Virus record (IMG/VR): IMGVR_UViG_3300032046_000001 | Location: 248,421-312,420 of that record | Direction: 5' to 3' (one strand) | Length of the DNA: 64,000 nt | Shown: positions 8,904-33,297 of the stretch, piece by piece | How the letters are laid out: every line of letters begins with the position of its first letter | How positions within the stretch are numbered: position 1 is the first letter of the stretch | Program-made: the position numbers and the translations under genes | Notes under the pieces: model-generated | What the model was told of the DNA's origin: nothing | Database searches by the model: none | Seen by the model: only the letters and a program-made list of their open reading frames with translations

Positions 8904-9560
8904 TTAAATATTTTGATGATATTTATCATTTAAAATTTTTCGTATACTACTTATTGCGTGTTGTTCATATTTTTCTCTAAATAATTCAGTACGAAAAATA
9001 TGTTTTTTTGGATCTAAAAGAGTTAGTAAAAAATTTATTCTGGCATTTTTACTGAATGATAATCCATATTCCTTTTCAATATTATCATCATATTGATTGA
9101 AAGTTTCTTCATCAGAACCTAATATTGAAAAATCAATGTCATACATATAATTATATTCAATTATTGGTTTGGTTGATGTTCCATATTTTGTTTCTAAAAT
9201 TAAATCAGCAACTAAATCTGGATTTAATATCAAGTCTAACTCATATATTGATCTTACTGCTTCTATAGAACTTAATAATTCTGATTCTCCATTATAAGTA
9301 GTCATGATAAAATCATGCCAGAATATGGCGTACTCCATTTCTTCACGATTTGGAAGGGTTTGCTTGATACTATCTAATAGATCAATACTTCTCATAATAT
9401 GATCAATATTATGATAATGTCTTCTATGAGAAGTATATGCCGATATTAATTGATTTAAATATGCGGAGTGACTAAATCCACCACCATATAACGCAACACT
9501 TTGACATAATCTTGAAAATCTTTCTCTAAATGATGATATATCCATTATGACCACCACCAA
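8904..9560 (-). CDS. HD-superfamily predicted metal-dependent phosphohydrolase
   Basis: Y...RRHYHNIDHI, AIFWHD, DIDFSILG, FDQY...I..EY motifs. Confidence 0.85.
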   Translation of the reverse strand: MVVVIMDISSFRERFSRLCQSVALYGGGFSHSAYLNQLISAYTSHRRHYHNIDHIMRSIDLLDSIKQTLPNREEMEYAIFWHDFIMTTYNGESELLSSIEAVRSIYELDLILNPDLVADLILETKYGTSTKPIIEYNYMYDIDFSILGSDEETFNQYDDNIEKEYGLSFSKNARINFLLTLLDPKKHIFRTELFREKYEQHAISSIRKILNDKYHQNI

Positions 9561-10711
9561 TATCGCTGAATTGTCTCAGCTAATTTATGAAAACATTCTC
9601 GATCAAATTCAGTATCTGATACATTTGAATTATTGAATGTGATAATATCTCCGTGACCATCTTTTTTAATTTGATCTTGTATTCGTTTTCTAAGTTCTCC
9701 TGATGTTAATTGACTATTGATTCTTTCTTCGATTTGTTTATCAGTTAAAGATCTTGATCTTAATCTTTCATATTGTTCACTTGGGCTTGTCTCAACCAAG
9801 ATCACATTGTTATTAGATAGATAACCCAAATTAAAATCTAATATTTTATTACCGAATAAATAGGCACAATTCAGAAGAATAATACAATCTTTATTTTTCT
9901 GTAATTTCTCTCGATAGAGCATGAATAGAGCTTCATCTACTAATTTATATAGTTTAATCAATCTTTCAGGATTAGGGAAAACTTTCTCAGCCAGGATATG
10001 AGAATCTATCAAACACATACAATTATTATTAGAAAATATAATATCATCACCAAATTCGTCAACAATGTTTCGACGAATTTGTGTATAATATGGTTGAAAT
10101 CTCTGTGTATAAATCTCATGAACAAGATTATCGAAGTCTATATTAATCATCTTTAATGAACCAGCTTCAATTATCTTTTTTGTGACGAATGACTTACCAC
10201 AACCGATACCACCTACAACTCCAATAATTATTTGTCCAGAAATTTTTTTCTCAAGAGCTTGTTTGACATATAAAGGTACAAACTCATGAATGAATCCTTT
10301 GTGTTGTTCTAATACTTTAACAACAGAAGAACTCACATTTTCATACTTCTGTTCCGAAAATAAAAGTAAAGTCTCGATATTGGGAGCTTGTGATTTACCA
10401 ACTTTATATAGATTTGTTTCATACTGATAATCTTCTTGATTTCGGACACTTTTCACAATGATATCTATACCGTTTAAGATCGCATAATCAACAAGCAACC
10501 CATCAAATGCTGATACTTCAACATTAGGTATATGAGCAACTGATTTACGGATAAGTTCCAATCTCTCATATAAATTAAAAACATACTTCTTTGTTTCATT
10601 AATTCCAACGGCAACATGTACTTGTTCAAATAGTTTAGCTGCTCGTTCGATTGTATTTATATGACCAAAATGGATCGGGTCTCCACTCAGAGCAAACATA
10701 GCTTTTGACAT
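9545..10711 (-). CDS. coaD: Bifunctional phosphopantetheine adenylyltransferase / dephospho-CoA kinase (CoaD-CoaE fusion)
   Basis: N-term DPIHFGH (HxGH), FDGLLVDY, R..EDYQYE, SSSVVK; C-term IGVVGGIGCGKS P-loop plus CoaE-like segments. Confidence 0.88.
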   Translation of the reverse strand: MSKAMFALSGDPIHFGHINTIERAAKLFEQVHVAVGINETKKYVFNLYERLELIRKSVAHIPNVEVSAFDGLLVDYAILNGIDIIVKSVRNQEDYQYETNLYKVGKSQAPNIETLLLFSEQKYENVSSSVVKVLEQHKGFIHEFVPLYVKQALEKKISGQIIIGVVGGIGCGKSFVTKKIIEAGSLKMINIDFDNLVHEIYTQRFQPYYTQIRRNIVDEFGDDIIFSNNNCMCLIDSHILAEKVFPNPERLIKLYKLVDEALFMLYREKLQKNKDCIILLNCAYLFGNKILDFNLGYLSNNNVILVETSPSEQYERLRSRSLTDKQIEERINSQLTSGELRKRIQDQIKKDGHGDIITFNNSNVSDTEFDRECFHKLAETIQRYWWWS

Positions 10712-11618: not shown

Positions 11619-11854
11619 TCATCATCTTGGATTGGTTTGGTATCATACCAATCCAATATAGCTCCACAGTATGGACACCAATAAATATATGTTTCACCAC
11701 CAGATGATGAATGTGGGTGTTCATGATGTTCAATTAATTCCATCTGATAATTACAAAATTTACAAATTTCATCAAAATTCATTTTTTCAAACCTGTTCCT
11801 ATATAGTATTTTTATGATATTCGTAGAACTTATTATTATAATCACGACATACAT
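11582..11854 (-). CDS. Zinc-ribbon protein (start probably internal)
   Basis: CKFC and WCPYCG pairs. Confidence 0.55.
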   Translation of the reverse strand: MYVVIIIISSTNIIKILYRNRFEKMNFDEICKFCNYQMELIEHHEHPHSSSGGETYIYWCPYCGAILDWYDTKPIQDDDWKEPIMTKDCI

Positions 11855-12791
11855 CTAAACAATTATTACGACATATAGAATCTTTATAAGTATCATGGTT
11901 TTTATACCAATTATATCTTTCTTCCATTATCTTATTTCTGATAATTGAGTGTTTCGATCCACAATGTAATATATTTCCGATTGGTTTTCCCTTTTCTCGC
12001 ATATAAATAATACATGGATAATGATATTCTCCGGCGATTGCTATATCATCTAATACCAATGGACATCGATTATAATCAGATAAAGAAAGACCTCGTACTG
12101 GAATATTATTTATGATATTGTTATACCGATATTTTAGTATTGGATGTTTATATAATATAGACGATTCAATATAAAATGTTGGATATTGTGTCCCATTTTG
12201 CGCTGCTGGTATAATGCGTATATCATCTACATGTAAGTCATGTGCTAATCTAATTATATCTCCCAATTCGGACATATTTTGTTCAGTCAATACCACACCA
12301 ACTGTTATATAAGATATCAATGATAAAAATTCAATTGTATCTATTACCTTTTTCCATTGACCTGTTTTTCCAGTCATTGTGTCACCTGTTGATGAACAAC
12401 ACGAATCCAGTGAAACAGAAAAATCATTCACTCCTGCGGCCATTAAATAAAAATATAATTCTTGATCATTAGACCCATTTGTTGAAATGGCAATATGTCC
12501 TATGTTATTTTGTCTCGCATATTTAATCATTTTTAACAGATCTTTATTTAAAGTTGGTTCTCCTCCTGAAAATCTGATATTCCTGATTTTATTATTGAAT
12601 ATATCAAGAATACATTTAATAGAATCTATCGTAAGATCACCACATAATTTATCTTCGAGTCCACGACAATATGGACATTTAAAATTACATCTATCGGTAA
12701 TTATTATTTCACATCGATTGATTATACCATCGGGAATTTTTTTTACTCTTTCTTCACACAATGTATAAAAACCTATTTCTTCAAGATTCAT
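11799..12791 (-). CDS. Radical SAM enzyme
   Basis: CNFKCPYC (CxxxCxxC), FSGGEPTL, ISTNG, SLD. Confidence 0.92.
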   Translation of the reverse strand: MNLEEIGFYTLCEERVKKIPDGIINRCEIIITDRCNFKCPYCRGLEDKLCGDLTIDSIKCILDIFNNKIRNIRFSGGEPTLNKDLLKMIKYARQNNIGHIAISTNGSNDQELYFYLMAAGVNDFSVSLDSCCSSTGDTMTGKTGQWKKVIDTIEFLSLISYITVGVVLTEQNMSELGDIIRLAHDLHVDDIRIIPAAQNGTQYPTFYIESSILYKHPILKYRYNNIINNIPVRGLSLSDYNRCPLVLDDIAIAGEYHYPCIIYMREKGKPIGNILHCGSKHSIIRNKIMEERYNWYKNHDTYKDSICRNNCLDVCRDYNNKFYEYHKNTI

Positions 12792-12844: not shown

Positions 12845-13171
12845 TTATTTTCTATAATTCCAATAACTTCTTTCATCTATTAATTCAGTACATTTTTCAA
12901 ACCATTCATCCACTGTATAAATTTCTGGTAAATTCAAACTAATTTTACCATAAGCACCATTATGAATTATATCAGAGGCATAAAACGTATAACCTCCAAT
13001 TTTAAAGGAATGTTTAAGATATATATTTTTTTCAAAATCATAACAAGCTCTACACTCCCGTTCTATATCACATAATAATGCCTCAGCAGATTCATACTCA
13101 GCGGGGAAAATAATTTCCCCGCCTTCATACTCACTACCATATTGATAAATAATAACGAGTCTCATCAACAA
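12845..13171 (-). CDS. Hypothetical protein
   Basis: ORF track. Confidence 0.55.
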   Translation of the reverse strand: MLMRLVIIYQYGSEYEGGEIIFPAEYESAEALLCDIERECRACYDFEKNIYLKHSFKIGGYTFYASDIIHNGAYGKISLNLPEIYTVDEWFEKCTELIDERSYWNYRK

Positions 13172-14670
13172 TCACCAGATTCGATTCGTTTCTTCATTAT
13201 TTCTTTCAATTCTTGAAGCTCTCTGCTAACCCAAACCGATTGTCTCTTTGGAAATTTAAGATCTTTCCATTGAGGTTTCAATAATGCCATTTCAGACTGA
13301 TGATATATCTTAATTTCATTAGCCATCAATGGCACTGTTAATCTCACATCATTCTGTAAAGTAGGTTGTAGCATGTTATGACGAATATCCCTTAGATCAG
13401 TATATCGTCTTCTTCCACTATTCGACCGCTCAACCATCTCTTGAGAATCAGATTTTGGTTGATCTTTTAAAGAAGTTGAATACTCTCCTTCAGAATCACG
13501 ATGTAATGATTTTTTACCAGGATCGGTCATTTTCTCTATACTACTACTAAGTTTGATGGTTGGATTACCATCAATATCAACTAATTTATAAACAACTCCT
13601 AACGGTACAGGAACAAGTTTAGTTCCAATACCATCAGCATCATTAGCTGCTTCTTTTTCCATCATCAACATTCTAGTATCTTCATCAATATCATTAGATG
13701 TAACGATCTTTACTGCTTTAAATCCGTTATCATCCAGAATCTTTCTTACAGTTTGAGAATCCCAAATTAAATCACCGGAATCGATACGAACTTTAAATCT
13801 CCGTAAACCGTGTTTATTTGCCGTTTTAAGGGCATCTCTTAGTCCTGTGAAGGTTCCATAGGTATCTAAAATAAATGCGGATTTCTCCCCAAATAACGAA
13901 GCCTGGGCATCAAAACTATAGAGTTGTCTCCTGTATGCCTCAACGGAACTATGGCTTGCTGTTCCTGATAATGGAATACCATATACTTGTCCCGCTAAAA
14001 CATTAGAACTTGATGTTGCCCCAGTGATATAGAATGCTCTTGATAATTCCAATGCCGCTTCTCTACCCATTCCTCTTCGCATATGAAAGTCTGCCCAAGG
14101 AACAGATGGATTAGCCAATGTCATTCTGGCACCATTGGTAGCACCAGCAATAACATATCCCATACATCCTAATATATAGGTTTCAATAAAATCACCGATT
14201 GCCAAAGGTGCTGTTATTTGAATTAAAGGAATATGGGGTTGAATAACAGTTCCTTCTGGAACCATTTCAACATATCCTTTAAACGATAACTCTCTTAAGT
14301 ATTCATATAATATCTCTGGAAAGTTCCATTGAGATTTGATAAAATCGATATCTCTTCCAGTCATTTCAAGCTGTTGGAGATATTCAATTACTTTTTCATT
14401 TCCCATCATTATACCGAAACTACCATTCTTTGGATTGTTTCGATAAAACATGTTAAACGTAGCGATGTCGTCTTGTTTACCAGAATGTAAATACATCGCC
14501 ATTTTCAATAGTTGATAAAAATCTGTTGACATGGCTGAGTTTAGAGGAGGTTTATCTGTAATATAAAATCTATTACCTTGAGGATCTTGAATTTCAACAT
14601 AACCATTCTTCATCACTTTCAATATTTTATTACCGCTATTGACAAGTGATTCTAAAAACTTATCATTCAT
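13165..14670 (-). CDS. pncB: Nicotinate phosphoribosyltransferase (internal start of the 13165..15171 ORF)
   Basis: TDFYQL, FHMRRG, SNVLAG..YGIP.SGTASHS, LDTY, VRIDSGDL, SNDIDE, GIGTKL, VYKLV, KxTDPGKK; SD GGAGGG ahead of ATG at 14670. Confidence 0.88.
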   Translation of the reverse strand: MNDKFLESLVNSGNKILKVMKNGYVEIQDPQGNRFYITDKPPLNSAMSTDFYQLLKMAMYLHSGKQDDIATFNMFYRNNPKNGSFGIMMGNEKVIEYLQQLEMTGRDIDFIKSQWNFPEILYEYLRELSFKGYVEMVPEGTVIQPHIPLIQITAPLAIGDFIETYILGCMGYVIAGATNGARMTLANPSVPWADFHMRRGMGREAALELSRAFYITGATSSSNVLAGQVYGIPLSGTASHSSVEAYRRQLYSFDAQASLFGEKSAFILDTYGTFTGLRDALKTANKHGLRRFKVRIDSGDLIWDSQTVRKILDDNGFKAVKIVTSNDIDEDTRMLMMEKEAANDADGIGTKLVPVPLGVVYKLVDIDGNPTIKLSSSIEKMTDPGKKSLHRDSEGEYSTSLKDQPKSDSQEMVERSNSGRRRYTDLRDIRHNMLQPTLQNDVRLTVPLMANEIKIYHQSEMALLKPQWKDLKFPKRQSVWVSRELQELKEIMKKRIESGDC

Positions 14671-15171
14671 TAAAACAATTCCCTCCAGTTTCGTTTGAAT
14701 AAGGTTGGTTGATCTACCATACCAGTATATTCGAATTTTCTTTTTCCCAAATTTAAAAGCCTCATATGGCTTTAATATATCAATTCTTGATCGAAATCGA
14801 GAACTTGTTTTATCAAGAACGATTTTTTCTCTAACTACATTATCGCTCTTGTAATAAATTTTTGTGTTTCGATCTAATCCTAATTTTACCAGATCTTTCG
14901 AAACAGCAATAATTTTGTGACGATTCTTGTTATGAATCCTGTCATTCCACGCACAAATATTTGGTGTAGAATCACATTGTTTTTTTGTGGCATTATATGC
15001 AGTTGCATCAACAATCTTACTATTTATAATCGGAATTTCCGATTGTTTAATACTCCAAATATAAAAAGATCTAAAATGATTTTTTGATTGAGTATCATAA
15101 ATTTTTGAAGTTGTAATTACTACCGGACACAATATAATTAAAATAAATAACATCATAAATGTCTTTTTCAA
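14671..15171 (-). CDS. Exported 3D-domain (MltA-like) protein, in frame with pncB and lacking its own stop
   Basis: Signal-like N-terminus; ATAYN...QCDSTP, IIAVSKDL, VLD...R..RIDI, FG.KKIRIYW. Confidence 0.7.
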
Positions 15172-15182
15172 ATTATTATCTC

Positions 15183-15545
15183 CTATTTAATTATTCTATT
15201 TTTATTATGATCTCCTGTATGTTTAGACGTAGGTTTTTTTTCTAAATTTTCAAAAGTATTTTCTAATTTATTTTTATTTTTATGGTGAATAACTTCATCA
15301 CATTTTAATTTTTCTATAAAAGTTTCATATAGTAAACGATGAACTCTCCTAGTTTTTATTATTTTATTTTGACATAAACGAGCACGAAGATATCCAGTAC
15401 TACTCTTGGTTTGTTTTAATATTTTATTTTTCTTGATAGATTTAATTCTACTAAAATTACTTATTAGATATTCTGGAAACTCTTCGATTATTTTCCAAGT
15501 TTCATTTTTTAAATCTCGTAAGTTTAAATTTTTATATATTTTCAC
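15183..15545 (-). mobile_element. NUMOD4-HNH homing endonuclease (short, probably truncated)
   Basis: ETWK.I..FPEY.ISNFSRIKS, RVHRLLYETF, IHHKNKNKLEN..ENLE. Confidence 0.8.
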
Positions 15546-15572
15546 TAAAATTCCTTTTTAAAAAATTTATAA

Positions 15573-15620
15573 AAAAAATCCTCTGGATTAGGAGGGAGTA
15601 AAATATCCAGAGGATTTTTT
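15573..15620 (-). terminator. Intrinsic terminator after SPFH operon
   Basis: 16-bp inverted repeat AAAAAATCCTCTGGAT / ATCCAGAGGATTTTTT with T tract on the minus strand. Confidence 0.75.
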
Positions 15621-15641
15621 CAATTAATACTGTTAAACAAA

Positions 15642-16580
15642 CTATTCTTTGGTTGGGAATGTCTGTTTGTAGAGCATTGAACTCCCTACTATGGGACCGA
15701 AATTCTTACTGGTTAGTGCATCATAAGGTGCCAACATAAAAGTATTATTTGGACCCTTTGCCATTTCTTCGTACATCTTGTACTGTTCTAATGCTAATAC
15801 AGCCGGTGTTAAGGAGGCACCGACAATGGCATTGGCTTTGGCTGTAGCTCTCGCTCTTTCTACTTGGGCTTCGCCTTCCTTAATGGCAATCTCTGTCTGT
15901 CGTTCAGCTTCTCTTGTCCGCGCTTGGGCTTCTGCGGCCTTCTGTAAATCATCAAGTTCGGCATTTTTAATAGCCGTTTTCTTGTTCTTGATCTTTTCCT
16001 CATAATCCAGGTCAGATACCTTAAGGCCGGTGGTGATTATCGGGAATCCCTTACCCTTTATTTCAGCAGCAATCTGTTTGTTTAATTCATTCTCAATGGG
16101 TCCGCGTAGATCCTGGAGATTGTCAGTATTGTATGGTGCTACAACACTTCGTGTAGTACTCCGAATGGTACTTTGTATTACGGCCTTGTAGAAGGTGGCG
16201 AATTCAACTTTGTATATCTTGGAGTCACTTGTGGGAGTTGGTTTCACTATACTCAGAATTTTCTTAACAGACTCATCATCCCGTAGGTCAAACTGGCCAA
16301 AGTACTTCACATCCATGATTACAGGTATCTGATCTTTACAGAGGATGTGCATCGTGTCTTCATCAAACTTATTGATGGAACCGTCGATATAAATGGTAAG
16401 ATCACGGCCATATGCGTGGTAGTTGCCATCACGAATGATATTGAAGTTTCCACCAGAATCCTTGATAACAATTACTGTTGCTGGAGGCACGGTCTTACCC
16501 ATACAACCGAAGATCGAAGGAAGGACACATAAAATCAAAGCCATAAATAGTACATATTTCAGAGATTGTTTCGGATTCAT
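15642..16580 (-). CDS. SPFH/band-7 (prohibitin-like) membrane lipoprotein
   Basis: Lipobox IFGC, CKDQIPV.MDV, IRS.TR.V...Y, VSDLDY, Ala/Glu-rich coiled coil. Confidence 0.85.
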   Translation of the reverse strand: MNPKQSLKYVLFMALILCVLPSIFGCMGKTVPPATVIVIKDSGGNFNIIRDGNYHAYGRDLTIYIDGSINKFDEDTMHILCKDQIPVIMDVKYFGQFDLRDDESVKKILSIVKPTPTSDSKIYKVEFATFYKAVIQSTIRSTTRSVVAPYNTDNLQDLRGPIENELNKQIAAEIKGKGFPIITTGLKVSDLDYEEKIKNKKTAIKNAELDDLQKAAEAQARTREAERQTEIAIKEGEAQVERARATAKANAIVGASLTPAVLALEQYKMYEEMAKGPNNTFMLAPYDALTSKNFGPIVGSSMLYKQTFPTKE

Positions 16581-16643
16581 ATTAATGCTCCTTATATTAG
16601 AATAACATTGTTTAAACTACCATTAATATTAAGATTCTCCCTC

Positions 16644-17078
16644 CTAAAGAGTATCTAGATACTTCTGGAACTCATCACGAGCTTTTTGATTCTTTTCTCG
16701 AATCTTGTCGTTCAGTTCCATTTCACGTTTTTCTTTCATATCCTTAATGAGTTGTTCAATTGTATTCGGATCAGATGTTTTGTGATCCTCCAATTGTTTT
16801 TGATTATATTGCTCGGATTGTGTACCAACACCGCTGTCATATGATTTCACTGTTACATCATGAAGGAATATTCTGGAAGCGATAAATATGATCGCACCAG
16901 CGGTCAGAAGTACTTTAATAACAGAATAAATAACAGCCAGGACATTATACCATGATTCATTAACTTCAAAAATGGTGAACAATTTCTTAATTCCCCATTT
17001 CGAAGTCATAAAGATGATAATCATAAATATGACCGATGCCACAAACCAAATCAGCGGTTGAATATGAAAATTTAACAT
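16644..17078 (-). CDS. Two-TM membrane protein with coiled-coil tail
   Basis: Two hydrophobic helices, GAGGAG SD. Confidence 0.75.
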   Translation of the reverse strand: MLNFHIQPLIWFVASVIFMIIIFMTSKWGIKKLFTIFEVNESWYNVLAVIYSVIKVLLTAGAIIFIASRIFLHDVTVKSYDSGVGTQSEQYNQKQLEDHKTSDPNTIEQLIKDMKEKREMELNDKIREKNQKARDEFQKYLDTL

Positions 17079-17204
17079 AATTTGTTCTCCTCTCGAAAAA
17101 GATTTCCTGAATCACTAATGTTGTCATCATAACTCTTCAGGTGGATAGTATCATTTATACGTGCTATTCATTTAACTACTATGAATTGTAGAGATATAAA
17201 TTAC

Positions 17205-17224
17205 TTCACATATTAATATATATA
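17205..17224 (-). promoter_or_regulatory. Conserved intergenic motif, putative phage promoter (copy 2)
   Basis: TTCACATATTAATATATATA, identical to copy 1. Confidence 0.65.
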
Positions 17225-17249
17225 ATAACTTCGGTTTATTTCTAAATTA

Positions 17250-18020
17250 TTACTCTATATTCTCATCCCATCGTACCAATGCTATTGGAGCTAATGCCCT
17301 CTTATGCTCAGTAGCTTCCATAATTTTTGAAATTCTCACTTCGTCTGGTGTTGTAGGTGTCTTACCACTGAGATATATTTTTGTGAGAACATCATCAAGA
17401 ACATCATAATTTCCGATATCATCCTCATCATAATGATTTGGTGTTAGATCAGCAGTTGGTCGCTTTGTCAGAATTTTTTCGGGAATTTGAATATAGTCGT
17501 GTTGAGTACAAAGTATATTATTATAATAATGTGCTAGACCATATACATCTCTTTTTAGTAATTCACCTAATAATTCGATATCTGATGCTCCATCGCCGAA
17601 TTTTGTAAAATATCCAGTCATAATTTCTGATAAATTACAAGTTCCAATAACTTTACTATTATGTTCATTGGCGTATGCATACAATAGACACATTCTTATC
17701 CTAGACATTATATTTTCTTTAGTTCCATTTTGCCATAAGATTCCGGTATTATAAAAGCTATCGTATATATTTCTAATGTTTATAATAGAGTATGATACAC
17801 CGAATTGGTGTACTAGATCAATACCATCCTTAAGATGTTCATTTTCCCAATATGGCATAAGCATAGCATGAATCTTGTCTTTTCCAACAGCCTGAACAGT
17901 CATTGCGAGACAAAGAGATGAGTCAATTCCACCAGATACTCCGAGGATAAAACCACTAGATGTTTCTAATTCTTCTCTGACAAAATCAACAATAATTTGA
18001 TTCACTTTTTCATAATTCAT
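17250..18020 (-). CDS. nadE: NH3-dependent NAD+ synthetase
   Basis: LGVSGGIDSS, NIMSRIRM..LY..AN, GTCNLSE..GYFTKFGDG, K.PTADL. Confidence 0.93.
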   Translation of the reverse strand: MNYEKVNQIIVDFVREELETSSGFILGVSGGIDSSLCLAMTVQAVGKDKIHAMLMPYWENEHLKDGIDLVHQFGVSYSIINIRNIYDSFYNTGILWQNGTKENIMSRIRMCLLYAYANEHNSKVIGTCNLSEIMTGYFTKFGDGASDIELLGELLKRDVYGLAHYYNNILCTQHDYIQIPEKILTKRPTADLTPNHYDEDDIGNYDVLDDVLTKIYLSGKTPTTPDEVRISKIMEATEHKRALAPIALVRWDENIE

Positions 18021-18675
18021 TTTCCATTCTCCTTTTTATTTTTGATACTGTTGAATGAACTACTCCGTGTTTATTTGCAATCTGTCTTTGAGTTAAATCA
18101 TCTTTTTCAATATCAATTTTTATATCAATATATTTTTGATTTGACAACCTGTTAAGATTATTTTCACTCATTATCTTTTTTGTTTTTTCTGAATGTTTTT
18201 TTCCTTTATTGCTTTCACTTATTTTTATTTTAGTTTCTTCTGAAAGTAATCTACCTTTTGGATTATGAAGTTTGTTATGTTCTTTTTTAGGTATCATTAT
18301 TAAATTTTCTAAAATATTATTTTCTTTATTTCTATCTTTATCATGATGAACACATTCATCAGATTTTAATTTATAATCATTAAAAGTTTCATAAACTAAT
18401 ATATGAATTTTTTTAGTTTTCTTGTTTCCATTTTTAGATAAATTAATTACAAAATAATCATCATTATCTTTATGTTGTTTTATTATTTTTCCACTTATTT
18501 TATCATATTTAAAACTTTTAACTCGACCCAGATTACTAACTTGATAATCACAATCATAATCTAAAATATCTTTCCAAATTTCATTATCTAAATCATTAAT
18601 ATCTAAATTTTCGTATATTTTCATTTTAATGCTCCAAGTATCTGAAAGAAAATTTTTATAATATAAAAATGACAT
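18010..18675 (-). mobile_element. NUMOD4-HNH homing endonuclease with NUMOD3/HTH tail
   Basis: EIWKDI.DY..DYQVSNLGRVKS, IHILVYETF, VHHD.D.NKENN.LENL, SEETKIKISES. Confidence 0.85.
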
Positions 18676-18703
18676 CTTTTTAAAACGTTATTTTACTTAT
18701 TCT

Positions 18704-18723
18704 TTCATAGATTAATATATATA
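18704..18723 (-). promoter_or_regulatory. Conserved intergenic motif, putative phage promoter (copy 3)
   Basis: TTCATAGATTAATATATATA, 18/20 to consensus. Confidence 0.5.
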
Positions 18724-18728
18724 GTTCT

Positions 18729-19322
18729 TCATGACTTTGAAAAATCTGGATTCTTACCTAAAAATAAAGACCTATTTAATGCGTTTGGATCAATACCAGC
18801 TTTTTGACACAAACCAATAATATATATAGGATCTATTGGTAATTTATATTCTTTTAATTTTCGTCGAACGTGTCGATCAATAGGAAATGCTGGTAATTTC
18901 AAATAATCTCTGATAAATAACCAAAGTACTTTAGTTCCTTTGGGATTTGCACCACATAAATTGAAAAATTCAACAATTGGTGTAGTCCATGAATATTTAC
19001 CTTTTTCAAGCCAAATATCACATAATGTTTTAAATTCAATTTGTTTTTTATTTAACGAAGTTATCATATTGAATAACATATCATTTTCCCATTTTAGTGG
19101 GTAGATATTTTCAAATTGACTTGGTAAAATATTTCCCAAATCTCTATTATTTAACCACTGAATAGCCCTGGTTTGAACTTTTTTTCTTCTTTCGACTTTC
19201 CAAGGACCAGCACCTATACAAATAAGAAATGCCTTATTTGATTCAGAACCTACCCATGTATGATCATAAGTAGGTTCTGATGAATACATTTTTTTTATTT
19301 TTTCGATATCTTCACTTGACAT
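18729..19322 (-). CDS. HhH-GPD DNA glycosylase-like protein
   Basis: G.KV..LF........FPIDRHVRR resembles the endonuclease III/OGG HhH-GPD signature. Confidence 0.6.
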   Translation of the reverse strand: MSSEDIEKIKKMYSSEPTYDHTWVGSESNKAFLICIGAGPWKVERRKKVQTRAIQWLNNRDLGNILPSQFENIYPLKWENDMLFNMITSLNKKQIEFKTLCDIWLEKGKYSWTTPIVEFFNLCGANPKGTKVLWLFIRDYLKLPAFPIDRHVRRKLKEYKLPIDPIYIIGLCQKAGIDPNALNRSLFLGKNPDFSKS

Positions 19323-19584
19323 GATAACCTCTATCTGATAGTTCCGTCATTGATTCAAAAAAATTATTATGATGAAATAAAATTTTTCTTCCATCACATT
19401 CAAATATTATCCAACCATTTCCTAAATTTTTTAATATTTTTGCCTCTGTTGGAATATCATACATGACAGAAAAACCACCTTCATGAACAACTTTTGATGG
19501 ATCTTGTTCATATGTTTTACAGGAAATAGTTCCTAATATAATAAAAATAATTAATAAAAATTTTTTAATATTTTTGATAGTCAT
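19312..19584 (-). CDS. Putative lipoprotein
   Basis: KKFLLIIFIILGTISC signal/lipobox. Confidence 0.65.
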   Translation of the reverse strand: MTIKNIKKFLLIIFIILGTISCKTYEQDPSKVVHEGGFSVMYDIPTEAKILKNLGNGWIIFECDGRKILFHHNNFFESMTELSDRGYHVK

Positions 19585-19723
19585 TTAGTGATGAAATTTT
19601 TCCAGTTTTCCAATCAAAAACTAAAGTATTTTCCATACGTTGACGTAGAAGTTTATCTATTTCTTCATTATGCGCCAGTTCATTTGCAAGTTTTTCCAAT
19701 TTTATTTTTTCATCTTCTGTCAT

Positions 19724-20035
19724 TTACCAAGCTCCCTCACTTTTATATCCAAGATCTTCTATTGAACTCAAATCAAAACCTCGTTCATCTTCGAACATCT
19801 GTTTTAACCTGATTCCCTTATTAATACCTTCTTGTCTCAAACATGCTGATAAATATAAAATATCTTCTCTTAAGTTTTTTAATCGTTGAATTCTGTCTTC
19901 GATTGCTCTATTTACACCTATTGTTTGTTTGTAAGATCTTTGGCTGTCTAAATTATCAATTTCAACTTTTATCAATCTTGCGATTTCAAATAACTCTTCA
20001 CCATCAAAAAATCGACCTATTATTTTATTATCCAT
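19724..20035 (-). CDS. Hypothetical protein
   Basis: ORF track, operon context. Confidence 0.6.
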   Translation of the reverse strand: MDNKIIGRFFDGEELFEIARLIKVEIDNLDSQRSYKQTIGVNRAIEDRIQRLKNLREDILYLSACLRQEGINKGIRLKQMFEDERGFDLSSIEDLGYKSEGAW

Positions 20036-20705
20036 TGAAATCTCGATTTATTAGATTAATCACACTATCTGTTCTAATAAAAAGAGCACCTGCTTTCATC
20101 ATCTCAAATAAGGCATTCTGTTTGCCTTCCTCAGTGATATGATATATACAATCATCAATTACCCATACTTTCTTTCCTCGTTTAAGAAGACCAAGTACAG
20201 CAGCTAAAACACAGTACTCAGTTGCAACACCATATACAAAGAAAGTATCAATATCGAGATATTTTAAACAAAAATCAATATTTTGATTACCACCTGGGTT
20301 CGTTTCATCCCAAAAAACATTATAGCTTTGTTTTTCAAAAGTAATTTGACATGCTGCATCTAAAAGAATTTTTAAAAGTTCTTCACTATACATATCTTCT
20401 GAATCAATATGTATTGAATACTCTGGTGTTGTTGATTCTTCAATTTTACTACAACCATTTGTATCATCTTCACAATGCATTGGAAATGGTCCACCATTTA
20501 CATCAAGTTCTATTTCCGCTTCTTTATGTGCGGTATCTCCAAAATGTCTATCACCACAACCAAGTATTTTAATATTATTTTCATAACCATATTTTGTTAA
20601 TTTAGAAATATTTGGAATAATTTTTTCAGAATCTTTTATATATAATTTACCATTCTTGGTCATAAAATCAACTAACGTATCTACATCAAAAAAAGCGCAT
20701 TTCAT
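20028..20705 (-). CDS. pncA: Nicotinamidase / isochorismatase-family hydrolase
   Basis: DVDTLVDF..GKL, D.H, FPMHC, FEKQSYNVF, YGVATEYCV (catalytic Cys). Confidence 0.9.
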   Translation of the reverse strand: MKCAFFDVDTLVDFMTKNGKLYIKDSEKIIPNISKLTKYGYENNIKILGCGDRHFGDTAHKEAEIELDVNGGPFPMHCEDDTNGCSKIEESTTPEYSIHIDSEDMYSEELLKILLDAACQITFEKQSYNVFWDETNPGGNQNIDFCLKYLDIDTFFVYGVATEYCVLAAVLGLLKRGKKVWVIDDCIYHITEEGKQNALFEMMKAGALFIRTDSVINLINRDFNG

Positions 20706-21200: not shown

Positions 21201-22382
21201 TTAGGCGATCATTTCTTCTGTTATATCATAGTCCTTTTCAGTGTCATCTCTTTCAACTTCAAATTGAAAATCAACCATTAAAGACTCAATAACAGATTTT
21301 AATCCTCTCGCTCCAATCCCCTTTCTGTCAGCGATTTCGGCAATTCTTCTTATAGCATTGTCAGTAAAATTTAAATTAATATTATCAATTTCTAATAATC
21401 TCTGATATTGTTTGATTATTGAATCAACTGGGTCTGTTAAAATACGAGCTAATTCATCAATGGATAATCTATTAAGTACCGACACTATTGGAATTCGGCC
21501 AACTAATTCAGGTATTAAACCATACTGAATAAGATCATCTTGTTCTAAATAATTTAATAAATCGATATCGCGTTCAGCTTTAGACATCTTTGTATTAAAA
21601 CCAATATTATTTTTACATAGACGAGCTGAAACAATATCAGAAAGACCATTAAAGGCACCACCAAATACAAATAATATATTTGATGTATCCATTAACAATC
21701 GATCTCCATGTGGGTGTTTTCTTGCACCTGTTGGTTGAATATTCATTACTGAACCTTCAATCATTTTTAACAAACCAAACTGAACACCTTCACCTGATAC
21801 GTCTCGTGTTATCGATGTACTTGCTGAACTCTTCTTGGCTTTTTTATCAATCTCATCAATAAAAATAATTCCCTTAGATGCTCGTTCAACATCAAAATCA
21901 CAAGCGAGTAATAACATTTGAATCATTGATTCAATATTATCACCCACATAACCTTCTTCGGTTAATGTTGTTGCATCAGCAATAATAAATGGAACTCTCA
22001 ATATTTTTGATAATGTCTGTGCAAAAAGTGTCTTTCCAGATCCAGATGGACCTATTAAAAGAATATTACTTTTTTGGACATTAAGGTTACATAGAATCTT
22101 TAACATATGATTATAGACACCAACAGAAATTATTTTTTTAGTTTTTTCTTGACCAATAATATATTGATCTAAAATAATTTTAATCTCTTTTGGTGTCATG
22201 ATTTTTTGTTTTTTAGGCTTTGAATTTTTAATTTGATCAACTTTAAGATCCGAATTAATATTTTCAGCCGTTAATGCCAATCTTGCTGTATCAATACAAG
22301 AATCACAGATACAAATATTCGGATCGCTCGATTCAATTATTAATTTATAATCTGTACTATGACAGAAGCTACATTCTCTCAT
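21201..22382 (-). CDS. clpX: ATP-dependent Clp protease ATP-binding subunit ClpX
   Basis: CSFC..ICDSC zinc finger, GPSGSGKT, GYVG, FIDEIDK, RDVSGEGVQ, IGF loop, GARGL. Confidence 0.96.
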   Translation of the reverse strand: MRECSFCHSTDYKLIIESSDPNICICDSCIDTARLALTAENINSDLKVDQIKNSKPKKQKIMTPKEIKIILDQYIIGQEKTKKIISVGVYNHMLKILCNLNVQKSNILLIGPSGSGKTLFAQTLSKILRVPFIIADATTLTEEGYVGDNIESMIQMLLLACDFDVERASKGIIFIDEIDKKAKKSSASTSITRDVSGEGVQFGLLKMIEGSVMNIQPTGARKHPHGDRLLMDTSNILFVFGGAFNGLSDIVSARLCKNNIGFNTKMSKAERDIDLLNYLEQDDLIQYGLIPELVGRIPIVSVLNRLSIDELARILTDPVDSIIKQYQRLLEIDNINLNFTDNAIRRIAEIADRKGIGARGLKSVIESLMVDFQFEVERDDTEKDYDITEEMIA

Positions 22383-23064: not shown

Positions 23065-23640
23065 TTAATATATTTTCATCATACTCTTAATTATTTCACT
23101 GTCATTCTTACTGGAAACAATAGTTGAAATATCATTTGTTCCAAATTTTTTAATTCGAATTGCCCATTCATCGATATCTGAAAATATGTCTAAATATTTA
23201 TGAGTTTCATTAACTCTATCTTCAAGCGTTTGGTTTGGAATCTTATTTATATTTAAATAATCTATTAATAGACTGATTAAAAATTCAAAATTAAAATTTT
23301 GATTTTTTGATCTAACAATCAATTCATGATAAAAACCATCAGCATAAATCGACATTCCTCTATACATCTTAAATTCGTCATCGATATGAAAATTGAAAAA
23401 ACAATTGTGATAATTGTCTTTATACTTGTAACTGAAATTAATTTTCAAATAAAAATTTTTTAAATTTATTTTTTCAATTAGATCATCTGGAATAACAACA
23501 ACACTTAATATTTGTCTTAACTCATTAAGATCTACTTTAGTTTCACTTAAAAATGAAACCATTGCTATTGATCCATAATTGTGATGATTATCAATAAATA
23601 ATATAGACTGTTTAAATTGCTCAATTCCAAAATATGTCAT
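23065..23640 (-). CDS. Hypothetical protein coupled to rpoB
   Basis: ATG overlaps the rpoB stop. Confidence 0.65.
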   Translation of the reverse strand: MTYFGIEQFKQSILFIDNHHNYGSIAMVSFLSETKVDLNELRQILSVVVIPDDLIEKINLKNFYLKINFSYKYKDNYHNCFFNFHIDDEFKMYRGMSIYADGFYHELIVRSKNQNFNFEFLISLLIDYLNINKIPNQTLEDRVNETHKYLDIFSDIDEWAIRIKKFGTNDISTIVSSKNDSEIIKSMMKIY

Positions 23641-26600
23641 TAATCTCCTTTATCGATTCCGATAACTGTTAGATATGAATTTAATAATCGTACAGATTCA
23701 CTTATCATATCATTCTCTTTATAAATTTCATTCCGTAATTTATTTCCAGAATCGATTTGATCAAACATCCATTTATTCTTAGCCTCAATTGAATCAGACT
23801 TGGTTGTCATTGATTCATTCAAATTATGAACAGAATCATGAGCAATCATACAACTAACTTCCATTTCACCAAGTCTTTGACCACCATTATTTCTTTTACC
23901 ACCAGTTGGTTGTAGTGTTTTCTTAGTATATGTTCCAATTCCTCTCGCTGATAATTTATCTTCAGCTATATGAATCATTCGAAAGAAATACAAATACCCT
24001 ACAGCTAAATCATTTACAAGCGTATCACCGGCAACTGGATCATATATTGGATATTTAAATCGAGTGTTTGTATATTTCAACGCTTTTTTACATTGCTTTA
24101 TATTTATCGATTCAAATGGTGGTTGAATCAAAGAAAGATCATCAATAAATTTTTCATCAATCTTGACCATTTTTAATTGATTTTTAAACTGGTTAAAATA
24201 CCAGTTATCTTTTGTATTATCAATAATTTTAATATATTTTAATAAATATTTTTTAATGGTTGATTGTGATAAGATACCCTCCTTCAATTCTTGATATTTG
24301 AGTTTTTCTTCTTCAGATTCAAGTGAATCAATCATTTGTAATAATTCATTATCTTTTTTAATCAAACTTCGCATGTTATTTTTCAGATCCATTAATGACA
24401 TTGCCAAATGAAGTTCAAATAACTGTCCGATGTTCATTCGACTTATTATTCCTAATGGATTGATGATAATATCTAATGGTCTACCATCAGGTAATTTCGG
24501 CATATCTTCAGTTTTGACAATCTTTGAAATAACACCTTTATTGCCGTGTCTATTTCCTATTTTATCGCCAACTTCGATTTTCCGAATATAATATCCTGTT
24601 AGATGAACAAAAATACCATCAAACTTCTCACCTTTAATTTTATACTTACCCTCAGATAAAAAGTTGTTTAAATTATTTTTAGCGAATTTATTATATTCAC
24701 TTTTGGGTAAATATTTTCCCAAGATTTTACTTATTTTTTTCTCTTTTATTTTTTGATCAATAATTTTTTGTTCAATCCAATCTTGAAATTCTTGAGGTAC
24801 ATTCTTAGTTGGATAATCATTGACATAAATATTACTTTCGAGAATACACATCTTTTTGGGAGATATTAAATTTTCATCTTCTTCAAATAACACACTGAAG
24901 TCATTGTTTTGTTGTACTTTTCGTAACATTGCATATGGTTGACCAGTATTAATCCACTCCCCAGGTTCAGGTAATGGTTTATATTCCATAGTCCTCGCAC
25001 GTTCACCATATTCGTCATACTCTTCAGGTTGTGGCTTACATGTATTCAAATTTGAAAGTATTTTATTTGATGGGATAAAGAATGAGAGATCTCGATAATG
25101 AATAGAAGATAAGATTCGTTCATCGACTAATCTTTCGGATATCACTATACCATCTTCATAATTATAACCATAGTATATACCAATACCTGTTAATAAATTT
25201 CTACCAATACTAATATTACGATCCTTTGTAAATAATGATTCAACTAAAATATCACCTTGACGAAATCGTTCTCCCTCTTTGAAGTTCGTTTCCATCATGT
25301 CCATATTATCAGTATAAATTTTCTTGTAACCAGTTTGAATTAATTCGATTTCATCATCATCATACTTGACAATAATAAATCCCTCATCATCGTCATGATA
25401 TAATACAATTCCATCTTTTTTGGCCATCTTAAGAAAGTTTGTATATTGCGTATATAAACTCTCACATCCACTTTGAATCAATGGTTTTTCTGGTTTTCTT
25501 AAAAGGATAGCTTGTCTCATTTGAGACGAGGCCATTTGTAATCTTGTTTGGTCGTCATGCTCTAAAAAAGGCACCATAGCAACTGGAATTGATATGGGAC
25601 TTTTAGATTGAATCTCGCTTGTGAATTTCATATTATGATCTAATTTTGAAGTTGGTAGAATATTTCCGACAATTCCACAATTATCTCTATCTGGTGTATC
25701 AACAACACAAATTCGTCCGAACATTGAATCATTGATATCACGAATATTTTCTGGAACACTCTTTCTTTCGAAACCATTCGGACCCAATAATGATATTCTT
25801 GATAATTCAGTCAATGAATCAATAGGATTTATTGAAAAATCAAATTGAATAATTTCCGATACATTACAGTTCTGTAATATTTCGGATGAATTGATATTAA
25901 ATTTTGGTTTTGAATTTTTAGTTATAATACATAGATTGAATATTGCTTTTGCCACATAACTAAAAATTAAATATTCAAAACATCTAATTCGTTTATTTTC
26001 ATAATTTAAAAAATCAAAAGGTCCATTTTGTATAGCATCAATAAAATCTTCTATAACAGAACCAGTTTTAAGAAATCTGGCTGTTATAACATCAATTTTT
26101 GGTATAAGATCTAATCCATATAATATTTCTTCACCTTTAAGTTTGGCATTATACTTAGTAAAAGTTTCACCCAACATCTTGGTATATTCGTCTTTGGTCT
26201 TATTCATATTATAATATAAATAGACTTGTTTAATTAATCGATTATAAAATGTGTCTTCTAAACCTTCAACGTTTTCCTGACTTAAATTAAATCGTGAATT
26301 TAATACTTCTGGACCATAATAGGCCAATAATAATAATGCGAAAGGTAGTTTTTTATTAAGAAAGGTAAATATGATCGTTTTCTTTTCATAAAGTATTATA
26401 GTCTGGACATTTGATTTAAACTTAATTATAAAACTATCATCTGATTTTTTATTCAATTTTGTTATTATTGGAAAATCGGTAATTTGAAAATGAGGAATCT
26501 TTCTTTTACCATTGATAAAAATATAATTATCGTCAATGAGTTCTGGAATGTTAATACTTAGATCAACTTTTGCCTCATCTTTTGATAAGATAATATTTAA

Positions 26601-30672: not shown

Positions 30673-31098
30673 TTATATCCCCAATTTGTGTAAATTAAAA
30701 AAATTTGATATTTTACCAATTATTGAGTTCTCTTTTTTCTCTACCTTTTTCATATATTCTTGATGATCATATGGTTCATACTCTATATAATTAAATGGAG
30801 TGAAATAACAATTATTTAAATTATAAGTTCTGATTAAATTTTCAATTAATTTAATTAAATCATTTGATAATACTTTATATTTGACATTAGCTGATAAACA
30901 AAATAAATCAGTATATGGATCGGCATTACAATGATCAGCATCTAATTTAATACTAATTAATTTATTTTTGCCATCTGTTATTCTAACTGAATATTTATCA
31001 ATTATATAATTTGGATCTATTTTTGTTATTCTGTAAATTTTATTATTATGAATCATTCTCTCAGGTACAAGTTTTTTTGCTATTACAAACTGTTTCAT
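30673..31098 (-). CDS. Hypothetical protein between ThiF2 and rpoC
   Basis: ATG overlaps the stop of 31098..31991; ends 5 nt before rpoC. Confidence 0.65.
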   Translation of the reverse strand: MKQFVIAKKLVPERMIHNNKIYRITKIDPNYIIDKYSVRITDGKNKLISIKLDADHCNADPYTDLFCLSANVKYKVLSNDLIKLIENLIRTYNLNNCYFTPFNYIEYEPYDHQEYMKKVEKKENSIIGKISNFFNLHKLGI

Positions 31099-31991: not shown

Positions 31992-32111
31992 TATCTAAAA
32001 TTGGTGGGTAATTAAAGTTAAATAAAATATATTTTTAATTTGTTATTTAAATAAATTTTTTATTCCCATAAAAAAATAAAAAAATAAATTAGGATAATTA
32101 TAGGATAAGGG

Positions 32112-32137
32112 AAGGGATGGAATTTCTTCCATCCCTT
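32112..32137 (-). terminator. Hairpin after the Ubl gene
   Basis: AAGGGATGGAA-TTTC-TTCCATCCCTT. Confidence 0.6.
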
Positions 32138-32186
32138 TTTCCACTTATGTACTACACCCGGTATATCATATTATAATATTGGGTTA

Positions 32187-33181: not shown

Positions 33182-33223
33182 TACAGACCTCCTTTACAAT
33201 ATTAAAAAGTACGAATTGTACCT

Positions 33224-33244: not shown

Positions 33245-33297
33245 GATATAATCGTATATACAAGAATTTAAATATTTGGGTGCTTTGTATAATTAAA

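What the first reader, a model, noticed from the sequence alone, without database searches (positions are those of the whole stretch)
13165..20705. Deamidating NAD+ salvage route (PncA, PncB, NadE) in a phage
Seen: nicotinamidase, nicotinate PRTase and NH3-dependent NAD synthetase within 7.5 kb. Established: these form the nicotinamide to nicotinate to NaMN to NaAD to NAD route, which also needs a NadD-type adenylyltransferase. Sir2/TIR/Thoeris defences destroy NAD+ and release nicotinamide, and the described phage NAD reconstitution pathways (NARP1 Adps/Namat, NARP2 Nampt/Nmnat) use different enzymes. Inference: a distinct anti-NADase reconstitution pathway. The adenylyltransferase step is not found in this window and could be host-supplied or encoded elsewhere.
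Basis: partly seen in the sequence, partly recalled or inferred. Interest (0 to 1): 0.75.

Follow-up and report, generated by a model that had tools for sequence, protein, structure and literature searches.

The report
Jumbo-phage nicotinamide-to-NAD salvage genes
A 312-kb sediment phage carries three of the four enzymes that rebuild NAD+ from nicotinamide via nicotinate, a gene set already reported in other giant phages, here without its own adenylyltransferase and with an odd extra domain on one enzyme.

Summary
On the minus strand of 13165-20705 lie a PncA-type nicotinamidase (20028-20705), a single-domain NadE (17250-18020) and a nicotinate phosphoribosyltransferase (13165-15171). The same set, in the same order, occurs in three diverged relatives. 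The window is the last 64 kb of a circular 312-kb jumbo-phage genome from sediment.

No NadD, NMNAT or Nudix gene was found in the window, in about 140 kb of the genome in total, or in the relatives' clusters. The only adenylyltransferase-fold gene nearby (9545-10711) is a CoaD-CoaE fusion for coenzyme A.

The kind is not new. Bacillus phage G carries PncA-like, NAPRTase, NadD and NadE genes together. A 2024 paper describes Preiss-Handler clusters in "NAD-jumbo phages". The route differs from NARP1, NARP2 and NARP3, but a role against NADase defences is untested inference.

New details:
- The cluster is conserved without NadD, so it presumably relies on the host enzyme.
- It is linked to CoA salvage genes.
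- The phosphoribosyltransferase carries a conserved N-terminal signal-like helix plus a 3D-type domain, which fits poorly with a cytosolic enzyme.

Verdict: a variant of a known kind, of moderate interest.

The parts
20028..20705 (-). PncA-type nicotinamidase (225 aa): nicotinamide to nicotinate + NH3
   Evidence: Pfam PF00857 3e-19. Top solved-structure matches are PncA-type nicotinamidases. Triad D9/K125/C165 and metal motif D52-x-H54/H77 are conserved. NCBIfam nicotinamidase model is below its cut-off.
17250..18020 (-). Single-domain (NH3-dependent type) NAD+ synthetase NadE (256 aa)
   Evidence: PF02540 2.7e-58. TIGR00552 200.5 bits against a cut-off of 63.65. PP-loop SGGIDS present, no CN-hydrolase domain.
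13165..14670 (-). Catalytic NAPRTase part (about 500 aa) of ORF 13165-15171: nicotinate + PRPP to NaMN
   Evidence: TIGR01513 324 bits against a cut-off of 297.4. 2F7F 3e-65 and 4YUB, no Nampt hits. An internal GGAGG, then 11 nt, then ATG lies at codon 168.
14671..15171 (-). N-terminal extension of the same ORF: signal-peptide-like hydrophobic helix plus a 3D-type double-psi beta-barrel domain
   Evidence: Conserved in 10 homologues at 36-78% identity over this region. AF2 model pLDDT 69. Foldseek matches 3D-domain, MltD and RlpA-like proteins over residues 45-148, E 2e-6 to 6e-4, and expansin/DPBB folds in PDB. It is a stand-alone ORF with a signal peptide in relative L005.
15183..15545 (-). 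HNH/NUMOD4 homing endonuclease inserted between the SPFH and NAPRTase genes
   Evidence: Pfam NUMOD4 4.5e-11, HNH_3. Absent at this position in relatives L006/L008.
18010..18675 (-). HNH/NUMOD4/NUMOD3 homing endonuclease just upstream of NadE
   Evidence: Pfam.
15642..16580 (-). SPFH/Band 7 membrane-scaffold protein, conserved between NadE and NAPRTase in relative L006/L007
   Evidence: PF01145 5e-9. phrog_200 1e-19. Synteny.
16644..17078 (-). Small membrane protein (144 aa) next to the SPFH gene
   Evidence: Hydrophobic N-terminal region. phrog_944 membrane protein 3e-4. By eye, the ORF at L008 3634-3975 looks similar.
18729..19322 (-). HhH-GPD/Ogg-like glycosylase-fold protein (197 aa), conserved between PncA and NadE in L006; not an adenylyltransferase
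   Evidence: No Pfam or PDB sequence hit. ESM Atlas structure matches HhH-GPD families, TM 0.53-0.66. 55% identical ORF in L006.
9545..10711 (-). CoaD (phosphopantetheine adenylyltransferase) fused to CoaE (dephospho-CoA kinase). Found within a few genes downstream of NAPRTase in three relatives and about 8 kb downstream in L005. The only adenylyltransferase-fold gene near the cluster.
   Evidence: TIGR01510 152.7 bits against a cut-off of 103.3. TIGR00152 77.2 against 65.55. NadD models score only 16-23 bits. Solved PPAT structures 1e-33. Synteny. The same fusion is common in cellular genomes.
8904..9560 (-). HD-superfamily phosphohydrolase-like protein (about 213 aa), conserved directly after CoaD-CoaE
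   Evidence: phrog_19425 phosphohydrolase 1.5e-17. Atlas HD clusters 0.97. Homologues in L006 and L008.
21201..22382 (-). ClpX-like AAA+ ATPase, upstream neighbour of PncA here and in L006/L007
   Evidence: Pfam AAA_2 1e-25, zf-C4_ClpX, ClpB_D2-small. Synteny.
11799..12791 (-). Radical SAM enzyme lying between NAPRTase and CoaD-CoaE in this genome only
   Evidence: PF04055 7.8e-22. Not at this position in L006/L008.

Best explanation
This is a conserved cofactor-salvage island of a circular 312-kb jumbo phage.

Proposed pathway:
1. The PncA-type nicotinamidase turns nicotinamide into nicotinate and ammonia.
2. The NAPRTase turns nicotinate plus PRPP into NaMN.
3. An adenylyltransferase turns NaMN into NaAD. 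The phage does not appear to encode one near the cluster, so this is most simply the host's essential NadD, which uses NaMN.
4. The phage NadE amidates NaAD to NAD+.

The effect is a higher flux from free nicotinamide or nicotinate into NAD+ in the infected cell. That would support phage replication in general. It would also rebuild NAD+ from the nicotinamide released by NADase defences. A CoaD-CoaE fusion and an HD phosphohydrolase nearby do the equivalent last steps for coenzyme A.

Shown: the gene identities by family thresholds and catalytic motifs, and the conserved synteny. Inferred: substrate use, dependence on host NadD, and any physiological or counter-defence effect.
For: - Family assignments are above curated cut-offs for NAPRTase and NadE. 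The nicotinamidase has its catalytic triad and metal motif.
- The PRTase is of the nicotinate type, not Nampt.
- The order PncA, NadE, NAPRTase, CoaD-CoaE is conserved on two related contigs (L006/L007, L008) whose NAPRTases are 38-43% identical. L005 keeps NadE, NAPRTase and, about 8 kb on, CoaD-CoaE.
- The genome is a phage: terminase and baseplate genes, T4-like topoisomerase II, RNA polymerase subunits and homing endonucleases. It is listed in IMG/VR.
- It is circular, with a 127-bp end overlap and an independent ENA assembly across the junction.
- Precedent: phage G has PncA-like, NAPRTase, NadD and NadE together. IMG/VR contig L013 has Nudix, NAPRTase, NadD and NadE. Preiss-Handler clusters are described in NAD-jumbo phages (PMC11662467).
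Against: - One of the four steps has no phage gene in the roughly 45% of the genome examined.
- The NAPRTase ORF begins with a signal-peptide-like helix and a 3D domain, a domain usually found outside the cytoplasm. PRPP and ATP are not available there.
- An internal ribosome-binding site and start codon that could give a cytosolic enzyme is present here and in L008, but not in L006.
- The nicotinamidase is below the NCBIfam cut-off.
- There are no expression or biochemical data. Only DNA runs from sediment and soil hold the sequence.
Confidence: 0.6

Rival explanations
1. The trio evolved mainly as a counter-defence, a fourth NAD+ reconstitution pathway. It re-uses the nicotinamide released by Sir2, TIR or SEFIR NADases and feeds it through host NadD. 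The phage needs no adenylyltransferase of its own because NadD readily accepts NaMN.
For: - NADase defences yield nicotinamide, and NARP1, NARP2 and NARP3 show that phages gain from rebuilding NAD+ (10.1101/2024.02.11.579819; PMC13464706).
- PncA, the enzyme that takes nicotinamide specifically, is part of the conserved set.
- The window also holds other conflict-type genes: a DarG-like macro domain, a SocA/Panacea domain and GmrSD_N.
Against: - There is no experimental test, and no paper in the library reports this route as anti-defence.
- The route costs PRPP plus up to three ATP and depends on a host enzyme.
- The linked CoA-salvage genes and the wide spread of NAD genes in jumbo phages fit general cofactor supply equally well (PMC11662467).
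Confidence: 0.3
2. The pathway is self-sufficient. A NadD or NMNAT gene lies in the part of the genome that could not be read here (record positions about 50,036-222,402).
For: Phage G and IMG/VR contig L013 carry their own NadD. Many NAD-jumbo phages do as well (PMC11662467).
Against: - No NadD or Nudix gene in about 140 kb around the cluster.
- None in the conserved clusters of three relatives.
- An IMG/VR-wide scan with a NadD N-terminal motif gave 90 matches, none on this contig. That motif does not cover all NadD or NMNAT types.
Confidence: 0.2
3. The three genes do not form a cytosolic pathway. The full-length 3D-NAPRTase is exported or membrane-bound and has another role, and PncA and NadE act separately.
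For: - Signal-peptide-like N-termini occur in six of ten homologues, with an intact 3D motif.
- In relative L005 the 3D protein is a separate secreted-looking ORF.
- SPFH and small membrane proteins sit in the same cluster.
Against: - NAPRTase residues shared with bacterial enzymes are invariant across the clade.
- The enzyme needs PRPP and ATP.
- The three NAD genes stay together across diverged relatives.
- An internal start exists in this genome.
Confidence: 0.1
4. The CoaD-like domain at 9545-10711, which stays close to the NAPRTase gene in all four genomes, also adenylylates NaMN and fills the missing step.
For: It has the same nucleotidyltransferase fold as NadD. It lies within about 2.5 kb downstream of NAPRTase in the window, L006/L007 and L008, and about 8 kb downstream in L005. 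The NadD profile gives it weak hits, E 7e-8 to 5e-4.
Against: It passes the PPAT equivalog model (152.7 bits against 103.3) while NadD models score only 16-23 bits. It is about 40% identical, by eye, to solved PPATs. It is fused to a dephospho-CoA kinase, and the same fusion is widespread in cellular genomes as a CoA enzyme.
Confidence: 0.05

Closest known systems
Bacillus phage G cluster gp273-gp283 (NC_023719)
   Same: A jumbo phage with a PncA-like isochorismatase (gp275), NAPRTase (gp277, 34% identical) and NadE (gp283, 33% identical) within about 6 kb.
   Different: Phage G also encodes NadD (gp281), a Nudix hydrolase and KptA. Its NAPRTase has no N-terminal 3D domain, and no CoaD-CoaE gene is annotated in the stretch read. 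Its enzymes resemble Bacillaceae genes.
NAD-jumbo phages with the Preiss-Handler pathway, e.g. Kuafu_71 pncB-nadD-nadE cluster (PMC11662467)
   Same: Phage genomes over 200 kb with clustered pncB and nadE, interpreted as phage-driven NAD+ synthesis.
   Different: That class is defined by a complete pathway including nadD. Here nadD was not found, pncA is part of the conserved set, and the cluster is linked to CoA salvage. The hosts there are gut bacteria; this phage comes from sediment.
NARP2 (Nampt + Nmnat) of phages (10.1101/2024.02.11.579819)
   Same: Starts from nicotinamide, uses PRPP and ATP, and ends in NAD+. It has been shown to counter NADase defences.
   Different: NARP2 is an amidated two-enzyme route with its own adenylyltransferase. 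Here the PRTase is of the nicotinate type, a deamidase and an amidating synthetase are needed, and there is no phage adenylyltransferase.
NARP1 (Adps + Namat) and NARP3 (PnuC-like + NadR-like; PMC13464706)
   Same: Phage-encoded rebuilding of NAD+.
   Different: NARP1 re-joins ADP-ribose and nicotinamide. NARP3 imports and converts nicotinamide riboside. No PRPS-like, Namat, PnuC or NadR family hit was found in the window.
Bacterial PncA-PncB-NadD-NadE salvage (Preiss-Handler plus nicotinamidase)
   Same: The same three enzyme families and reaction order. The NAPRTase is of the long form found in Firmicutes and eukaryotes (best structure 2F7F).
   Different: It is encoded by a virus, lacks NadD, is split by homing endonucleases, and its NAPRTase carries a 3D-type domain.

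Membership tests
Deamidating (PncA + Preiss-Handler) NAD+ salvage pathway | Nicotinamidase with Asp-Lys-Cys triad and metal site | tested here: met
   D9/K125/C165 are invariant and D52-x-H54/H77 is present. The best solved matches are PncA-type nicotinamidases. The NCBIfam model is below its cut-off.
Deamidating (PncA + Preiss-Handler) NAD+ salvage pathway | Nicotinate (not nicotinamide) phosphoribosyltransferase | tested here: met
   TIGR01513 324 bits against 297.4. 2F7F 3e-65. No Nampt hit. Substrate preference was not assayed.
Deamidating (PncA + Preiss-Handler) NAD+ salvage pathway | NaMN adenylyltransferase (NadD/NadM) | tested here: not met
   None in the window (Pfam on all ORFs of 100 aa or more; NadD profile on six frames). 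None in about 76 kb of further flanking genome. About 172 kb of the genome was not read.
Deamidating (PncA + Preiss-Handler) NAD+ salvage pathway | NAD+ synthetase with PP-loop | tested here: met
   TIGR00552 200.5 bits against 63.65; SGGIDS motif.
NAD-jumbo phage (PMC11662467) | Phage genome over 200 kb | tested here: met
   Circular contig of 312,420 bp with phage hallmark genes.
NAD-jumbo phage (PMC11662467) | All genes of at least one NAD+ synthesis pathway | tested here: inconclusive
   Three of four steps were found. NadD is absent from the 45% of the genome examined.
NARP2 | Nampt plus Nmnat | tested here: not met
   The PRTase is of the NAPRT type, and no Nmnat was found.
NARP1 | PRPS-like Adps plus Namat | tested here: not met
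   No PRPP-synthetase-like or Nampt-like hit in the window. The only other PRTase (59459-60019) looks PyrE-like.
NARP3 | PnuC-like transporter plus NadR-like enzyme | tested here: not met
   No PnuC or NadR family hit in the window. A lone AAA_28 kinase outside the window has no NadR support.
Phage counter-defence against NADases | Restores NAD+ and plaquing in cells with an NADase defence | not testable with these tools
   Needs expression and infection assays.

The most novel reading that the evidence does not exclude
A three-enzyme deamidating route (PncA, NAPRTase, NadE) that uses the host's own NadD is a genuine fourth phage NAD+ reconstitution pathway against NADase defences. It is kept together with CoA salvage as a cofactor-rescue island. 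Its NAPRTase is tethered at the membrane through the fused signal-anchor and 3D domain.
Probability: 0.2. Interest if true: 0.65.

Novelty: new variant of a known kind. Interest (0 to 1): 0.4.

Why it matters
NAD+ depletion is a common bacterial defence, and three phage pathways that rebuild NAD+ have been proven. The deamidating route has so far only been noted in genome surveys. This conserved three-gene module gives a compact set to test whether phages can also win back NAD+ through nicotinate while relying on one essential host enzyme. The fused 3D domain and the linked CoA genes also raise the question of whether giant phages manage several adenine cofactors together. If the test fails, the cluster remains an ordinary metabolic add-on of jumbo phages.

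Tried and rejected
- **Nearby adenylyltransferase-fold gene.** I first suspected 9545-10711 was the missing NadD. It is CoaD-CoaE by curated models and solved structures.
- **Unknown ORFs inside the cluster.** 18729-19322 has an HhH-GPD glycosylase fold, and 8904-9560 is an HD phosphohydrolase. Neither is an adenylyltransferase.
- **NadD profiles.** A narrow NadD profile was too insensitive. I replaced it with a profile of 123 diverse representatives.
- **Whole-genome NadD check.** The tools fetch only 10 kb either side of a gene. Walking covered record positions 222,403-312,420 and 1-50,035.
- **IMG/VR scans.** The P-x-H-x-G-H motif test is weak because phage G NadD itself lacks the motif.
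- **Failed or empty look-ups.** One exact-protein look-up failed on a start-codon guess. Megablast against GenBank phages found no close relative. No supplementary tables of PMC11662467 were held.
- **Promoter and terminator scan.** Uninformative in this AT-rich DNA.
- **Not run.** No alternative genetic code was needed. Read laying and complex prediction were not used because no claim depended on them.


Full report
**What is in the sequence.** The window has about 28% G+C, and nearly all long ORFs are on the minus strand. Within 13165-20705 three ORFs belong to NAD+ metabolism.

- ORF 20028-20705 (225 aa) is an isochorismatase-fold protein (PF00857, 3e-19). Its best solved-structure matches are PncA-type nicotinamidases, led by the P. 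horikoshii enzyme at 2e-13.
  - It has the catalytic Asp9, Lys125 and Cys165. These are invariant in the homologues from two related contigs and in phage G gp275.
  - It has the metal-site pattern D52-x-H54 and H77.
  - The curated NCBIfam nicotinamidase model scores below its cut-off (49.5 against 174), so the assignment rests on motifs and best matches.
- ORF 17250-18020 (256 aa) is a single-domain NAD+ synthetase. TIGR00552 scores 200.5 against a cut-off of 63.65. The PP-loop SGGIDS is present and there is no glutaminase domain.
- ORF 13165-15171 contains a NAPRTase from about residue 211. TIGR01513 scores 324 against 297.4. The best solved structures are E. faecalis NAPRTase 2F7F at 3e-65 and human NAPRT, and no Nampt matched.

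**The genome.** The NadE protein is found letter for letter on JGI contig 3300032046|Ga0315289_10000013, which is IMGVR_UViG_3300032046_000001, of 312,420 bp. The window is its last 64 kb (record position = window position + 248,420).

- The first 127 bases of the contig equal its last 127 bases.
- An independent ENA assembly of 312,308 bp runs through that junction. The genome is therefore circular, or circularly permuted, and complete.
- Phage genes in or beside the window:
  - two RNA polymerase beta/beta'-like pairs;
  - a T4-type split topoisomerase II;
  - RNA and DNA ligases;
  - an SbcC-like ATPase;
  - several HNH/NUMOD4 and GIY-YIG homing endonucleases;
  - three tRNAs;
  - a large terminase, baseplate proteins and an amidase.
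- The sequence recurs in several sediment and soil metagenomes.
- NrdD with its activase, and a rubrerythrin, suggest an anaerobic host.
- No close relative is in GenBank phages.

**The cluster is conserved, not a chance neighbourhood.** The closest NAPRTase homologues (38-83% identical) come from unnamed metagenomic contigs. The gene tables of three of them show the following.

- Two contigs (L006/L007 and L008) show the same order: isochorismatase/PncA, NadE, NAPRTase, then a CoaD-CoaE fusion, then an HD-type protein of about 215 aa.
- L006/L007 also have a ClpX-like ATPase upstream and an SPFH protein between NadE and NAPRTase, as in the window.
- L005 keeps NadE and NAPRTase, with CoaD-CoaE about 8 kb further on. 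No isochorismatase gene is on record in that stretch.

In the window, two homing endonucleases (15183-15545, 18010-18675) and a radical SAM gene (11799-12791) lie among these genes. They are not at those positions in the relatives and look like later insertions.

**The missing step.** NaMN must be adenylylated before NadE can act.

- Pfam scans of every window ORF of at least 100 aa found one cytidylyltransferase-fold domain, at 9545-10711.
- That protein passes the curated PPAT model (152.7 against 103.3) and the dephospho-CoA kinase model (77.2 against 65.55). NadD and NMNAT models score only 16-23 bits. It matches solved PPATs at 1e-33.
- The same fusion is widespread in DPANN archaea, Patescibacteria and other cells. 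It is a CoA enzyme, not NadD.
- The other unassigned ORFs in the cluster are an HhH-GPD/Ogg-like fold protein (18729-19322) and an HD phosphohydrolase (8904-9560).
- A NadD profile built from 123 diverse representatives recovers the true NadD of phage G and of IMG/VR contig L013 at E below 1e-65. In the window and its relatives it gives only weak hits on the CoaD domain.
- Walking outwards with gene tables and the same profile covered record positions 222,403-312,420 and 1-50,035, about 140 of 312 kb. No NadD, NMNAT or Nudix gene appeared.
- A scan of all IMG/VR with a NadD N-terminal motif gave 90 matches, none on this contig. That motif does not cover every NadD type.
- About 172 kb remains unread, so "absent from the genome" is not shown. 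"Absent from the conserved cluster and its surroundings" is.

**An unexpected feature of the PRTase.**

- The ORF has about 165 extra N-terminal residues. They are conserved in ten homologues at 36-78% identity over this region.
- They start with a signal-peptide-like segment: two lysines, then a hydrophobic run.
- They continue into a domain with conserved aspartates. An AlphaFold model (pLDDT 69) matches 3D-domain, MltD and RlpA-like double-psi beta-barrels (E 2e-6 to 6e-4), and expansin-type barrels in the PDB.
- PHROGs places the region with small stand-alone phage proteins of unknown function.
- In relative L005 the NAPRTase lacks this part. A separate 127-aa ORF with a signal peptide, 36% identical to it, lies about 3 kb upstream. 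The fusion therefore joins two genes of the same neighbourhood.
- 3D domains normally act on the cell wall outside the cytoplasm, whereas a NAPRTase needs PRPP and ATP.
- In the window a GGAGG, then 11 nt, then ATG at codon 168 could give a separate cytosolic enzyme. L008 has a comparable site, but L006 has none.
- I cannot resolve this. It is the main internal argument against a simple reading.

**How it most likely works.** Nicotinamide is deamidated by PncA. Nicotinate is coupled to PRPP by the NAPRTase. NaMN is adenylylated by the host's NadD. NaAD is amidated by the phage NadE, possibly with the ammonia freed in the first step. Enzyme identities are shown by homology. Substrates, host dependence and physiological effect are inferred. 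From general knowledge, bacterial NadD is essential and prefers NaMN. That would explain why a deamidating route can do without a phage adenylyltransferase, while NARP2 brings its own Nmnat.

**Comparison with what is known.**

- Bacillus phage G encodes a Nudix hydrolase, a PncA-like protein, NAPRTase, KptA, NadD and NadE within 8 kb. Its PncA-like gene has been discussed only in passing (PMC12484599).
- IMG/VR contig L013 has Nudix, NAPRTase, NadD and NadE.
- Of 668 gut jumbo phages surveyed, 174 encode a complete salvage or Preiss-Handler pathway, including a pncB-nadD-nadE cluster (PMC11662467).
- The proven counter-defence pathways use other enzymes:
  - NARP1: Adps and Namat;
  - NARP2: Nampt and Nmnat;
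  - NARP3: PnuC-like and NadR-like.
- The NARP preprint does not mention PncA, PncB, NadE or nicotinate, and the NARP3 paper does not mention PncA, PncB or NadE. I found no "NARP4".
It is wrong that the route is new to phages, and the anti-NADase role is untested.

**Verdict.** This is a NadD-less, PncA-containing variant of the already described jumbo-phage NAD+ salvage clusters. Its two unreported details are the link to CoA salvage and the 3D-domain fusion on the NAPRTase. Interest is moderate. It offers a clean, testable candidate for a fourth reconstitution route, but it is not a surprise to specialists.

Noticed in passing
window 9545-10711 and 8904-9560: A CoaD-CoaE fusion (the last two steps of CoA synthesis) followed by an HD phosphohydrolase. 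It lies within a few genes downstream of the NAPRTase gene in L006/L007 and L008, and about 8 kb downstream in L005. Phage-encoded CoA salvage is hardly mentioned in the literature searched. The fusion architecture itself is common in DPANN archaea and Patescibacteria.
   Followed up: partly
window 14671-15171: A signal-peptide-like helix plus a 3D-type double-psi beta-barrel fused in frame to the NAPRTase. It is conserved in ten homologues and is a separate ORF in relative L005 (6293-6676). The meaning is unexplained.
   Followed up: partly
window 23640-26801 and 27884-30667; L185 1437-3779 and 4504-8607: Two separate pairs of RNA polymerase beta/beta'-like genes in one phage genome, one pair in the window and one just past its end. 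The genes are large and unsplit (780-1367 aa).
   Followed up: no
window 2198-2656: A macro-domain protein resembling the DarG antitoxin, a DNA ADP-ribosyl glycohydrolase (NCBIfam 2.6e-16, below cut-off). It could counter DarT-type, NAD+-using toxins.
   Followed up: no
window 31098-31991 and 33298-33999; 32000-40000: Two ThiF/E1-like proteins flank a stretch with clearly higher G+C (0.35-0.40 against about 0.27). That stretch contains large ORFs without Pfam hits (33983-35263, 35193-37607).
   Followed up: no
window 43725-44279, 51319-51765: A SocA/Panacea antitoxin-type domain protein and a GmrSD N-terminal domain protein, possibly conflict-related genes.
   Followed up: no
window 15183-15545, 18010-18675, 49209-49886, 47110-48207, 61189-62061: Many homing-endonuclease genes (HNH/NUMOD4, an ORF with HNH and RNA-ligase domains, GIY-YIG). 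Two of them interrupt the NAD cluster.
   Followed up: partly
window 63874-64000 = first 127 bases of the contig (L183 1-127): A 127-bp terminal overlap shows a circular assembly. An independent ENA assembly of 312,308 bp spans the junction.
   Followed up: yes
L189 5499-6065 (record about 35.3-35.8 kb); L190 3739-4722: A 188-aa AAA_28 P-loop kinase. This Pfam family also covers the ribosylnicotinamide kinase domain of NadR, but there is no NCBIfam or PDB support for that here. There is also a PfkB/Phos_pyr_kin kinase. Both could be cofactor-related.
   Followed up: partly
L187 1291-3816, 885-1199: An anaerobic ribonucleotide reductase NrdD with its activase, and a rubrerythrin-like protein, pointing to an anaerobic host.
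   Followed up: no
window 59459-60019: A type I phosphoribosyltransferase (186 aa) whose N-terminal motif looks like orotate PRTase (PyrE). It is not related to Adps or Namat.
   Followed up: no
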